Positions 20,901 through 26,825 of a stretch of 64,000 bases of DNA are shown piece by piece. The stretch's first letter is position 1; the number at the start of each line of letters is the position of its first letter. The notes beneath the pieces are model-generated. The model did not search any database and had not been told where the DNA came from. It worked only from the letters and a program-made list of their open reading frames with translations. Made by a program: the position numbers and the translations under genes. Origin of the DNA: Ascidiella aspersa (taxonomy: Eukaryota); contig OZ004614.1 in the NCBI GenBank assembly GCA_963924565.1, forward strand, positions 6,324,001-6,388,000, read 5' to 3'.

Positions 20901-23900
20901 ACCGCAAGTGTTTCATTTAAATACCAAAAAGTTGTAAGTCCAAAATTTGGGAAACCGCTGGAGAAATTTGGGGGACTGTACCGTTTCGGTTCCCCAAAAC
21001 ACCTTAAAAAAACACTGCGCCCTTTTATATAATTTATCTACATTTTAAGAAACTTTTGTCTTGTTTTTCTCACCTGAAAACACGAATGAAGTCCAACAAG
21101 GAATGGATAATTTGAGGCAGTTTCAAACACGTGTTTTTCAGTTTGTACCCAATCTATATCCTCCTCGTCTTGAACTAATTCTTTCTTTATAACCTGCAAA
21201 AGCAAAACCTCAAAAATGATTTAGCGAATAAATGAAAACACATATTTACGAAAAATAATTATATACATAAAATTTTTACAGCAAAATTAAACAACAAGTA
21301 CTTTTAGATGTAATACATAAGTGACAGAATAAGCCATTGTAATAAAATATTTGTTACTTCAAAAGACAATTAAATGTCCTTCTTAATCAGGGGTTCTTTA
21401 ACTTTTTTTACCGCGGACCCCTAAGATTTTTTTTAGCTTCGCGTTGGACCACAATAGGCAAAAATTTTCAAAAAATGACAGCATAAATTGACGTCACAAT
21501 ACAAATAAACTTCATAAATCTGTTGATTTCAGTCGAAAAAAAGGTGAAAGTGAAATGGAATCTAAATACAGTCAGTGCAAAACCGTTTTGTTTTTAATTA
21601 AACGGCTTTCTTTGAAAAAATGATTACTTTTTAAATACACACTAATATTTCCCTTGGGCTTTCATGGACCCCCTAAAACTAATTCACAGACCCGCAAGGG
21701 ATCCATGGACCCCAGTTTAAGAACCCATGTTTTAAATACTATAAAACACATCCCCATTAAAGCCATCATGTTGTGCATGTTTTGTTCAAGGCCCAAATAA
21801 AGGTTTTAAAAAAATACTAAATAAATTATTATGGTTAAACGGTTTCTTGAGGGCAAGCAAAAATACCTTTTTTAATTTATTGAAAAAAGCAACAAGTAAG
21901 CTACGATTAGGGATGATCCTTGGATTCGAATCCAAAGGGATTCAAATCCAATTTTGCCGTTTATATCGGGTAATTGGAACCGATATAAATTTCATTCCAA
22001 AGTGTGCTTTTTAGAAGGCCGTGTGTGACGTATTTGGCCTGACCGTGCGGTTGGACTTTGGACTTTGACTCACGGTAGTCTTAAAATTCGCTGACTTTGC
22101 ATATTAACGTTTCGCTTTGCATTGGTGCTACATAAATTGTATTCCAAGTGCGTTTTTCAGAAGACCGTGTGTGACGTATTTGGACTGCTTTGGGCTCATT
22201 GTAGTGTTAAAAAATGCTGACTTTGTATGTTAACGTTTCGTGTTGGTGCTAAGGAATTCTGTATCGCATTGCTGTCAGACAGATTCCAAATATTCATAAA
22301 TAGTAAAAATTCCTCAACATTGTGCATAAGGATTCGATATTCTGGATTCGTTATTCTAGATTCGAAACCTGCTATTCTAGAATACCTTGGGATTCTACTT
22401 TGAACATCCCTAGCTACGATTGAACAAGTCATTTCATACAATGTTTTATCCCAAGATCTCAGTACAGACTTGGTAAATTTGATGGTGTGAAAAGAAGTAA
22501 AAATGTCCTTCATGTGAACATGGTTACCAATATGTTTATTAAAAACAATGCAAAATATTTTTTTTTGTTTATAAAATATTTTAGGCTGTTTTGGTAGGGT
22601 TACCAATCTGTTTATTAAACAACAGTTTACTGTCCCTGAAATAGTGACAATAATTTTTCCTAATAGCTGTGGTACAAAAATGCCTTTCATAATAAAATGT
22701 TAATATCAAAACACCTAAGTTATTAAAGAAATAAGTTTATCGAAATAAAGGGTAGTGTACACCTTTAAGTAAAATTAATATTTATATCAAAAAACAAGTT
22801 GCACCACAAAAAGTTAAGCAAGTTATGACAACCTAAGCTATCGGTTCAACTACAGACCTTCATTGCATAGGTCTTGTGAGTTGCTTTCAATTGGACGAGA
22901 AGCACTTTTGCGTAGCTGCCTCTACCAATGACCTTGATCATGTCAAAGTCCTTGAGGCCGAAGCCAGGTGCTGGTGGTGGAGGGGATTCCCCATCGGTCT
23001 GGCATGAGGAAATAAAGAGTCAAATAATTGGGATTCCTGTGGGCATTGTGGTCAATTAGTTGTGAAAGGAGCCTTTAGACTTGAAATGCACACACTGTTA
23101 AAAGCTATGTGCCTGAAGGAATTAAGACATATCTTATGTTTTAAAATATAAAATTGATGCTTTTAATATAAAACTCTACAGGGAAGTGGAAAATTCTATG
23201 TGATCAATGAAAAACATTTTACCAGTAATGACTCAAGCATTCTTACACTTTATATTTACATTCACAATCACATAAAAGAAGGACTTATATAATATATATA
23301 TATATATATACCAAAAATAAAATCTAACTAACTATTAGTGGCCTGGTTTGGCAACTTATATAGGCGATCTACAAATTCTGTCAGATAACAGCTGTGTATA
23401 ATTTATAGTTACAGTTTTATTACAAACGCAGAACTCTTTATTCTGAAGGATTGTTTTTTAATCTATGAAGGAAAAATGTATACTTTGTAATGTTGCAGCC
23501 ATTTTAAACCTTTGGCAGCCAAAGGACATTTTTTTCCTTCATAGATTAAAAAACAATCCGTCAGAATTTATAACTATTGCATATGGAAACCAGCCACCTT
23601 TGTTTGTGCTGCATCTGGATGCTCAGGTAAAGGATAGATGGGGATTTTTTGTCGCTTTTTTAATTTCTTAAACTTCTGCTTTAGCTTGATCCACCTTCGA
23701 GCTCCACGCCTTTAAACATAACAGTTGTTTATGTTTAAACACAAAAGTTGTTTATCTTTGATTTGAACAAAGTCAAAATTATACAAATGGTTTAAATTAG
23801 TATAGGTCAAACCTATGTACTTAGCACATTACAACAAGAAACAACTAAAACGATACCTATACACAATAATTGTTTTTTGTTTAATATGTGTGATTGACAT

Positions 23901-26825: not shown

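What the first reader, a model, noticed from the sequence alone, without database searches (positions are those of the whole stretch)
22858..24299. Atypical PKC with the C1 domain replaced by a short polybasic/proline linker
Seen: exon 3 ends ...CPGEHKIYR; exon 4 (23709-23598) reads [37 protein letters not shown]; exon 5 opens [33 protein letters not shown] found no Cys/His C1 exon in the intervening ~600-bp intron on the minus strand. The protein is about 506 aa against about 590 for vertebrate PKC iota/zeta. Known: aPKCs have PB1, pseudosubstrate, C1 and kinase domains, and C1 contributes to autoinhibition and membrane binding. Inference: the K/R-rich extension of the pseudosubstrate may substitute for C1 in targeting acidic membranes or act as an NLS, giving a rewired PAR polarity kinase. 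It may be a lineage-wide trait already present in databases; I cannot check this.
Basis: partly seen in the sequence, partly recalled or inferred. Interest (0 to 1): 0.8.

Follow-up and report, generated by a model that had tools for sequence, protein, structure and literature searches.

The report
Sea-squirt polarity kinase lacking C1
This is the normal sea-squirt version of the cell-polarity kinase aPKC, which truly lacks the zinc-finger (C1) domain found in other animals, a loss already reported for ascidians in 2006.

Summary
The window holds a single-copy, 13-exon, 506-codon atypical PKC gene on the minus strand. Exon 4 (23709-23598) encodes the RGARRW pseudosubstrate followed directly by a K/R-rich stretch. 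No C1 domain was found in the introns, the window, or (as an aPKC-type C1) anywhere in the 308-Mb genome. DNA contigs from other runs cross the region without a gap. RNA reads fall on the exon bins and not on the intron-only bins around exon 4.

It is not new. The closest protein is the Phallusia mammillata aPKC (Q52PI7, 504 aa), which has the same build. Ciona intestinalis, C. savignyi, Clavelina lepadiformis, Styela clava and several unnamed transcript-derived proteins share it. Together they form one clade (100/100). Outgroups listed (lamprey, hagfish, hemichordates, echinoderms, arthropods, Lingula) carry C1. Prulière et al. 2011 (PMC3113769) state that all ascidian species examined keep PB1 but lack C1, citing Patalano et al. 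2006.

The basic-hydrophobic segment (net +10 to +13 over 24 residues) is better conserved than PB1 or the hinge. It looks like a compacted remnant of the ancestral pseudosubstrate plus the basic N-terminal edge of C1. Its role as a membrane anchor or NLS is inferred, not tested.

The parts
26715..26825 (-). aPKC exon 1 (start codon, N-terminal part of PB1)
   Evidence: tblastn with P0074 gives 68% identity over residues 1-37. GT donor. RNA depth is 8.0 in bin 26721-26900.
24867..24956 (-). exon 2 (PB1 core)
   Evidence: Weak Pfam PB1 match, E 0.0022. AG/GT borders. RNA depth 2.3 and 1.5 in its bins.
24175..24299 (-). exon 3 (end of PB1; ...CPGEHKIYR with a split last codon)
   Evidence: Single copy in the genome. 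81% identical to P0074. RNA depth 2.65.
23598..23709 (-). exon 4: pseudosubstrate RGARRW plus basic-hydrophobic stretch, P-I-P-I-Y-P motif and start of the hinge; stands where PS plus C1 stand in other animals
   Evidence: Single copy. 65% identical to P0074. 12 K/R and 0 D/E in its first 24 residues. RNA depth 1.39 in its bin, with zero depth in the intron-only bins on either side.
22999..23597 (-). intron 4; no C1-coding piece; holds a hairpin-like inverted repeat at about 23440-23567
   Evidence: no C1. (reverse-strand self match, 75%). RNA depth is zero in bins 22940-23536.
23710..24174 (-). intron 3; no C1-coding piece
   Evidence: RNA depth is zero in bins 23736-24133.
22858..22998 (-). 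exon 5 (end of hinge, start of kinase domain with the GRGSYAKV glycine loop)
   Evidence: Pkinase positions 3-32; 82% to P0074.
14958..21193 (-). exons 6-13 (kinase domain and AGC C-terminal tail): 21193-21074, 20168-20071, 19351-19216, 18888-18676, 17730-17641, 17158-17063, 16449-16378, 15071-14958; stop codon at 14957-14955
   Evidence: Pfam Pkinase at E 1e-16 on two exons and Pkinase_C on the last. 76-99% identity to P0074, exon by exon. GT-AG borders.

Best explanation
The locus is the single aPKC (PAR-complex kinase) gene of an ascidian close to Phallusia. It has the architecture typical of ascidians: PB1, then a pseudosubstrate with a basic-hydrophobic extension, then a variable hinge, then an AGC kinase with its C-terminal tail. 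The atypical C1 zinc finger was lost once, in or before the common ancestor of the sampled tunicates.

Shown here:
- the exon structure;
- the absence of C1 from the locus, and of any aPKC-type C1 from the genome;
- expression of exon 4;
- the same build in cDNA- and transcript-derived proteins of at least five named ascidian species;
- monophyly of the C1-less forms.

Inferred:
- Exon 4 is the ancestral pseudosubstrate exon. The two C1-core exons dropped out, leaving RGARRW fused to the basic patch that lies at the N-terminal edge of C1 in other animals.
- The Ala-containing RGARRW still blocks the active site.
- The conserved +10 to +13 segment, with hydrophobic residues at i, i+3, i+7 and i+10, serves as the kinase's own acidic-phospholipid anchor once Par-6 binding to PB1 releases it. 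I put this at about 50%. It would take over what C1 contributes in flies and mammals. It may also keep the nuclear-import signal that lies in that part of C1.
For: Gene model and splice sites.

Absence of C1.

Single copy.

Assembly contiguity and exon-restricted RNA depth.

Relatives:
- P0072 (290 aa, from a 1315-bp contig) and P0073 run from PB1 through RGARRW and a K/R stretch into the kinase.
- P0074, Phallusia mammillata Q52PI7 (504 aa), has PB1, Pkinase and Pkinase_C but no PF00130.
- Of the 120 best rows, the top 11 lack PF00130 (Phallusia, two Ciona species, Clavelina and six unnamed). 106 of the 120 carry it.
- Styela clava XP_039270879.1 sits in P0084's cluster.

Tree: the 15 C1-less rows are one side of a 100/100 branch.

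Conservation: mean pairwise identity is 72% for the pseudosubstrate-plus-polybasic segment, against 57% for PB1 and 18% for the hinge.

Charge: 10-13 K/R and no D/E in 24 residues.

Literature: the ascidian C1 loss is stated in PMC3113769. The pseudosubstrate region as a PI4P/PIP2-binding polybasic domain gated by Par-6 is in PMC7337507. C1 as a phospholipid-binding membrane module is in PMC10435729.
Against: - No RNA junction read was shown for this species. One search read about 6% of the run, and exon depth was only 1-3.
- In Drosophila neural stem cells PB1-PS alone did not reach the membrane (PMC10435729), so a pseudosubstrate-type anchor may not suffice.
- The charge gain over canonical aPKCs is modest (+12 against +8 to +9), and hydrophobic moments overlap.
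- The AlphaFold model of P0074 was poor (mean pLDDT 47.9). The predicted helix at 105-125 has block pLDDT of 63, 44 and 40, so the amphipathic-helix idea is unsupported by structure.
- The exon-loss route rests on exon borders inferred from predicted exon-skipped vertebrate isoforms (P0090, P0043).
- The original 2006 paper could not be read.
Confidence: 0.88

Rival explanations
1. The basic stretch is chiefly a nuclear localisation signal. It would be the retained basic edge of the old C1, not a membrane anchor, and cortical targeting would depend wholly on Par-6, Cdc42 and Par-3.
For: Runs such as KKLKKRQK fit a classical basic NLS (consensus recalled, not from a call). MAFFT aligns the stretch with the AKRF-x-RR patch at the start of C1. 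Jones et al. saw isolated C1 mostly in the nucleus and ascribed this to an embedded NLS (PMC10435729).
Against: Conserved W, L and F/L at helical spacing between the basic residues (rows) is typical of basic-hydrophobic lipid binders (criteria quoted in PMC7337507) and is not needed for an NLS. The two roles do not exclude each other.
Confidence: 0.25
2. A C1-containing isoform exists but was missed, through an alternative exon or a hole in the assembly. The C1-less form would then be only one splice variant.
For: RNA depth was low and no junctions were listed. Vertebrate databases do hold predicted C1-skipping isoforms (P0090, P0094, P0043).
Against: No C1 ORF lies in the introns or the 64-kb window. 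No aPKC-type C1 is found anywhere in the 308-Mb genome. There is one aPKC gene only. Independent DNA contigs are contiguous across the region. Every tunicate protein found lacks C1: 11 of 11, plus P0072, P0073, P0202 and P0208. The literature says all examined ascidians lack it.
Confidence: 0.03
3. The basic amphipathic segment is a regulated protein-binding site (for example calmodulin or another acidic partner). This would give ascidian aPKC a new input in place of C1-mediated autoinhibition.
For: The hydrophobic residues are spaced 3-4-3 within a strongly basic stretch (rows). Its resemblance to calmodulin-binding and MARCKS-type effector domains is recalled, not from a call.
Against: No tool result points to such a partner. 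The same features are explained by lipid binding.
Confidence: 0.08

Closest known systems
Phallusia mammillata aPKC (UniProt Q52PI7, 504 aa; P0074), and the ascidian aPKCs described by Patalano et al. 2006 as cited in PMC3113769
   Same: The order of parts is the same: PB1, RGARRW plus a K/R stretch, P-R/K-I-P-I, hinge, kinase, C-terminal tail. There is no PF00130. All 504 residues are matched co-linearly by the window's 13 exons, at 65-99% identity per exon.
   Different: It is a different species. Exon 4 is only 65% identical, and the hinge differs. The window protein has I in place of Y after RGARRW, and Q at two basic positions.
Canonical metazoan aPKC (PKC iota/zeta, Drosophila aPKC, C. 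elegans PKC-3)
   Same: PB1, the pseudosubstrate RGARRW, the AGC kinase and the FEGFEY hydrophobic motif are shared. The kinase is about 67-70% identical.
   Different: About 56 alignment columns filled in at least 90% of the 27 other aPKCs are empty in all 15 tunicate-type rows. These include the whole Cys/His core. That removes the C1 phospholipid-binding and allosteric-inhibition module and the PB1-C1 interface described in PMC10435729 and PMC10333572 (the latter seen only as a search listing and abstract start).
Polybasic (basic-hydrophobic) membrane-binding domains: aPKC PSr, Lgl, Numb, Miranda, MARCKS-ED
   Same: A short K/R-rich stretch interspersed with W, L and F and carrying no acidic residues. 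These are the criteria quoted in PMC7337507.
   Different: Lipid binding of the ascidian segment has not been measured. It carries no Ser/Thr for phospho-regulation (rows).
Sea-urchin short aPKC isoform (PMC3113769)
   Same: It is another natural aPKC lacking one regulatory domain.
   Different: The urchin isoform lacks PB1 and keeps C1, and it coexists with a full-length isoform. The ascidian form lacks C1, keeps PB1 and is the only form.

Membership tests
aPKC orthogroup (by descent) | Closest relatives are aPKCs, and the gene is co-linear with a characterised aPKC over its whole length | tested here: met
   The 13 exons cover P0074 residues 1-504 in order. P0074's best hits are aPKCs. The tunicate clade sits among aPKCs (the window gene itself was not in the tree because its exons were not joined).
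aPKC orthogroup (by descent) | N-terminal PB1 domain | tested here: met
   Exon 2 matches PF00564 at E 0.0022. This is below the cut-off because the domain is split over three exons. Exons 1-3 align with the PB1 of P0074, which carries PF00564.
aPKC orthogroup (by descent) | Pseudosubstrate R-G-A-R-R-W with Ala at the acceptor position | tested here: met
   Read directly in exon 4. G111, A112, R113, R114 and W115 are invariant in 42 aligned aPKCs.
aPKC orthogroup (by descent) | AGC kinase domain and C-terminal tail with the acidic hydrophobic motif (FEGFEY) | tested here: met
   Pkinase at E 1e-16 on exons 8 and 9, and Pkinase_C on exon 13. [11 protein letters not shown] is read in the last exon.
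Canonical aPKC architecture (PB1-PS-C1-kinase) | Single atypical C1 zinc finger between the pseudosubstrate and the hinge | tested here: not met
   Searches find no C1 in the introns or window, and no aPKC-type C1 in the genome.
Ascidian C1-less aPKC (Patalano 2006, as cited in PMC3113769) | PB1 present, C1 absent, about 500-525 aa, and the conserved motif RGARRW-[YIL]-x-[LFK]-K...P-[RKQ]-[IV]-P | tested here: met
   506 codons. The motif is shared with all 14 tunicate-type sequences compared. All lack PF00130.
Polybasic membrane-targeting domain | Direct binding to PI4P/PIP2/PS membranes | not testable with these tools
   Only composition was assessed: 12 K/R, 0 D/E, and W/I/L/F/L in 24 residues.

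The most novel reading that the evidence does not exclude
Tunicates are a natural delta-C1 experiment. Their only aPKC polarises eggs and blastomeres with no C1, using a strengthened and strongly conserved basic-hydrophobic pseudosubstrate extension as its only lipid-binding and autoinhibitory element. If so, the segment should be enough to restore membrane recruitment to a C1-deleted fly or mammalian aPKC. That would bear on the current disagreement over whether PS (PMC7337507) or C1 (PMC10435729) is the membrane module. In the searches I found no paper making this link.
Probability: 0.35. Interest if true: 0.45.

Novelty: already known. Interest (0 to 1): 0.2.

Why it matters
As a genome feature it is ordinary. 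It is the expected ascidian orthologue of a kinase whose C1 loss was reported in 2006, with sequences in public databases.

Its residual value is comparative. Recent work makes C1 the key membrane-recruitment and autoinhibitory module of aPKC in flies. Yet a whole chordate subphylum runs PAR polarity without it, including the aPKC-rich centrosome-attracting body of ascidian embryos. The strongly conserved polybasic segment documented here is the obvious candidate for compensation, and it is a cheap, testable reagent.

Tried and rejected
- Hidden C1 exon: rejected.
- Second, C1-bearing aPKC paralogue, or a detached aPKC-type C1 gene: rejected.
- Assembly gap or mis-join: rejected. The window has no N, and contigs of two DNA runs with about 1% differences are contiguous across exons 3-5.
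- RNA junction proof: attempted, but the joints table listed only DNA-contig joints in intronic repeats, with 39 more rows not shown. Only depth evidence is available.
- Exon 4 against PDB sequences: 0 hits at E <= 10.
- Exon 3 against 1.84 billion cluster representatives: 70 hits, mostly fragments. This was useful only because P0002's cluster held P0072.
- Third word search, restricted to the linker: it returned the same tunicate set, 10 proteins and nothing new.
- AlphaFold of P0074 with a 42-row alignment: poor (pLDDT 47.9). No fold search was run, and the model is not used as evidence.
- Taxonomic reach beyond ascidians: left open. The P0086/P0087/P0088/P0208 group carries no names. Appendicularians, thaliaceans and amphioxus were not identified among the listed hits.
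- Supplements were closed and none was requested. Supplemental Figure S1 of PMC3113769 (an aPKC alignment) may show the ascidian sequences.
- The joined, spliced protein of this window was never built or searched. Whole-protein steps used the database protein P0074 as a stand-in.
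Full report
WHAT IS THERE

The minus strand of the window between 26825 and 14955 carries one 13-exon gene. I read the exons as stop-free pieces. I fixed their borders by exon-wise tblastn with a database protein and by inspecting the border bases.

The exons are 26825-26715, 24956-24867, 24299-24175, 23709-23598, 22998-22858, 21193-21074, 20168-20071, 19351-19216, 18888-18676, 17730-17641, 17158-17063, 16449-16378 and 15071-14958. 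The stop codon is at 14957-14955. All borders are GT-AG, and the lengths add to 1518 nt, or 506 codons. Whole-protein work used a database orthologue instead.

Pfam on single exons gives a weak PB1 match (E 0.0022), Pkinase (E about 1e-16, twice) and Pkinase_C.

- Exon 3 ends ...CPGEHKIYR, with the last Arg codon split AG|G, so the exon ends at 24175 rather than 24174.
- Exon 4 (23709-23598) reads [37 protein letters not shown].
- Exon 5 opens [32 protein letters not shown].

IS A C1 HIDDEN?

- None of the 34 stop-free pieces of 20 aa or more, on either strand of 22999-24173, matches PF00130 even at E <= 10. Only two chance families appear.
- Pattern scans for C1 fragments in pieces of 10 aa or more, on both strands of 14000-28000, found no CxxC...CxxC and no CxxCxxxxHxxC. 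They found two short H...CxxC chance matches far downstream, at 15761-15844 and 16143-16223.
- A six-frame PF00130 search of the whole 308.6-Mb assembly scored 78 candidates and gave 20 matches at E <= 0.01. None lies in C8:6324001-6388000, which is this window.
- The aPKC-type C1 of a lamprey protein (part of P0148) finds only other kinds of C1. The best match is 42% identity and 36 bits on another contig.
- Exon 3, exon 4 and the last exon are each single-copy in the genome. There is no second, C1-bearing aPKC.

IS IT AN ARTEFACT?

The window has no N. Contigs from two other DNA runs of the same organism label differ from the window at about 1% of positions. They run unbroken over 22485-24355 (X1), and over 22632-23811 and 23873-25099 (X2) (table 8).

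An RNA-seq run of the same species label (X3; about 6% of it read; 560 reads laid, most of them on intronic repeats) puts reads in the bins that hold the exons:
- exon 1: 8.0
- exon 2: 2.3 and 1.5
- exon 3: 2.65
- exon 4: 1.39
- exon 5: 0.76

All are in the orientation expected for a minus-strand mRNA in a stranded library. Depth is zero in bins 22940-23536 and 23736-24133, which cover introns 4 and 3 around exon 4 (table 2).

The joints table showed no RNA joints. Depth was too low or the rows were cut, with 39 rows not shown.

RELATIVES

A phmmer search with exon 3 against 1.84 billion representatives gave 70 hits, mostly fragments. The two best were P0001 and P0002, at 76% identity. P0002's cluster contains P0072, a 290-aa product of a 1315-bp contig, hence a spliced transcript. 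P0072 runs ...[37 protein letters not shown]... straight into the kinase domain.

Searching with the linker of P0072 found P0073 and P0074. P0074 is Phallusia mammillata aPKC, UniProt Q52PI7, 504 aa. Its precomputed Pfam domains are PB1, Pkinase and Pkinase_C, with no C1.

I then searched with P0074 as the query (3743 hits at E <= 1e-100 among 8000 scored; the best 120 listed).
- The top 11 rows all lack PF00130: Phallusia, Ciona savignyi (506 aa), Ciona intestinalis (510 and 582 aa), Clavelina lepadiformis (504 aa), and six unnamed proteins of 501-526 aa.
- 106 of the 120 rows carry PF00130, including lamprey, hagfish, two hemichordates, echinoderms, Lingula and many arthropods and vertebrates.
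- The other three rows without it are predicted isoforms or models: Pteropus X3, Orcinus X3 and a Rhipicephalus hypothetical protein.
- The 582-aa Ciona model (P0081) differs from the 510-aa one by a 72-residue insert in the hinge that is not a C1.

P0084's cluster contains Styela clava XP_039270879.1. The build therefore occurs in all three classical ascidian orders. This ordinal placement of the named genera is from my own knowledge.

A linker-restricted third search returned the same set. In a maximum-likelihood tree of 42 aPKCs the 15 C1-less rows form one side of a 100/100 branch, consistent with a single loss.

The window's exons are closest to Phallusia, but the species is not Phallusia mammillata. 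Identities to P0074 are:
- exon 1: 66-68%
- exon 3: 81%
- exon 4: 65%
- exon 5: 82%
- kinase-domain and C-terminal-tail exons (6-13): 76-99%

Earlier notes of this scan call the genome a sea squirt, which agrees.

ALREADY IN PRINT

Prulière et al. [quoted passage not shown] The 2006 paper itself is not held.

The 2019 review PMC7104321 mentions a single Ci-aPKC without commenting on C1 (passages). Searches combining aPKC with ascidian, tunicate or Ciona and with C1, cysteine-rich or PB1 found no further discussion. The feature is therefore already known, and the sequences have long been public.

WHAT THE SEGMENT LOOKS LIKE

I compared 14 tunicate-type sequences with the window's exon 4. The 24 residues from the pseudosubstrate onward hold 10-13 K/R and no D/E. 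The window has 12. Eight canonical aPKCs have 8-9 over the same span.

Hydrophobic residues recur at positions 6, 9, 13 and 16 (W, L, L/F, L/F/I/M). The stretch ends in a conserved P-[RKQ]-[IV]-P.

Among 12 full-length tunicate-type proteins, mean pairwise identity is as follows:
- pseudosubstrate plus polybasic segment: 72%
- PB1: 57%
- hinge: 18%
- kinase: 88%

The segment is therefore under constraint.

MAFFT places the tunicate K-x-K-R-F-K-K-R part opposite the A-K-R-F-x-R-R patch at the N-terminal edge of C1. 56 columns filled in at least 90% of the 27 other aPKCs are empty in all 15 tunicate-type rows. These include the whole Cys/His core.

Two predicted vertebrate isoforms drop parts of this region: one drops 17 residues (P0043) and the other about 47 (P0090). 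Both breaks start right after ...AKRFNR. This suggests that in vertebrates the pseudosubstrate exon ends there and that two small exons encode the C1 core.

My inference is that the tunicate exon 4 is that pseudosubstrate exon. On this reading the two core exons were lost, and a few residues (the x-V-N-G-H-x-F part) were deleted.

HOW IT PROBABLY WORKS

Established knowledge:
- The aPKC pseudosubstrate region is a polybasic domain that binds PI4P and PIP2. It is exposed when Par-6 binds PB1 (PMC7337507, abstract and passages).

For the ascidian kinase I infer that RGARRW keeps its autoinhibitory role. I also infer that the strengthened basic-hydrophobic stretch is the protein's own lipid anchor, compensating for C1 (about 50%). 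A role as a nuclear import signal is a rival or an additional function (about 25%). A new protein-binding input is a long shot.

An AlphaFold model of P0074 was too poor to help. Mean pLDDT was 47.9, and the helix predicted at 105-125 has low confidence.

VERDICT

The functional idea is reasonable but untested. Novelty: already known. Interest is low, with some comparative value for the PS-versus-C1 question in aPKC membrane targeting.

Noticed in passing
window 23440-23567 (intron 4): A hairpin-like inverted repeat. The stretch matches its own reverse complement at 75% identity over 128 bases, which looks like a small MITE-type insertion inside the intron.
   Followed up: no
window 21348-22541 and 25726-26720 (introns 5 and 1): High-copy repeats. 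Summed DNA word depth is 10^4-10^5, against about 56-89 for the unique flanks. RNA reads fall on both strands (up to about 40x at 22343-22541), with many loose ends, so these are expressed dispersed repeats inside the aPKC introns.
   Followed up: no
P0090, P0094, P0043 (database proteins): Predicted vertebrate PKC-iota isoforms that skip part or all of the C1 core, breaking right after ...AKRFNR. They hint at where the vertebrate C1 exons begin. They also show that C1-less forms exist in vertebrate databases as model isoforms; whether these are real is unknown.
   Followed up: partly
P0081 (Ciona intestinalis F6PPJ1, 582 aa): It differs from the 510-aa Ciona protein by a 72-residue insert in the hinge that looks like a retained intron. 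It is not a C1.
   Followed up: no
P0079, P0080, P0082: Ciona and Clavelina have His instead of Arg at the first pseudosubstrate position (Y-R-H-G-A-R-R-W). P0083 and P0073 have Lys.
   Followed up: no
window 14958-15071 (last exon) and tunicate C-termini: The C-terminal PDZ-binding motif ends ...EEVV here and ...ED[AV]V or similar in other tunicates. It ends ...E[DE]CV in most other aPKCs aligned.
   Followed up: no
window 24903 and 26769: All RNA reads differ from the assembly at two exonic positions: A>G in 7 of 7 reads and G>A in 12 of 12. One of the two DNA runs shares each change, so they are polymorphisms rather than editing.
   Followed up: no
I did not examine it.
   Followed up: no
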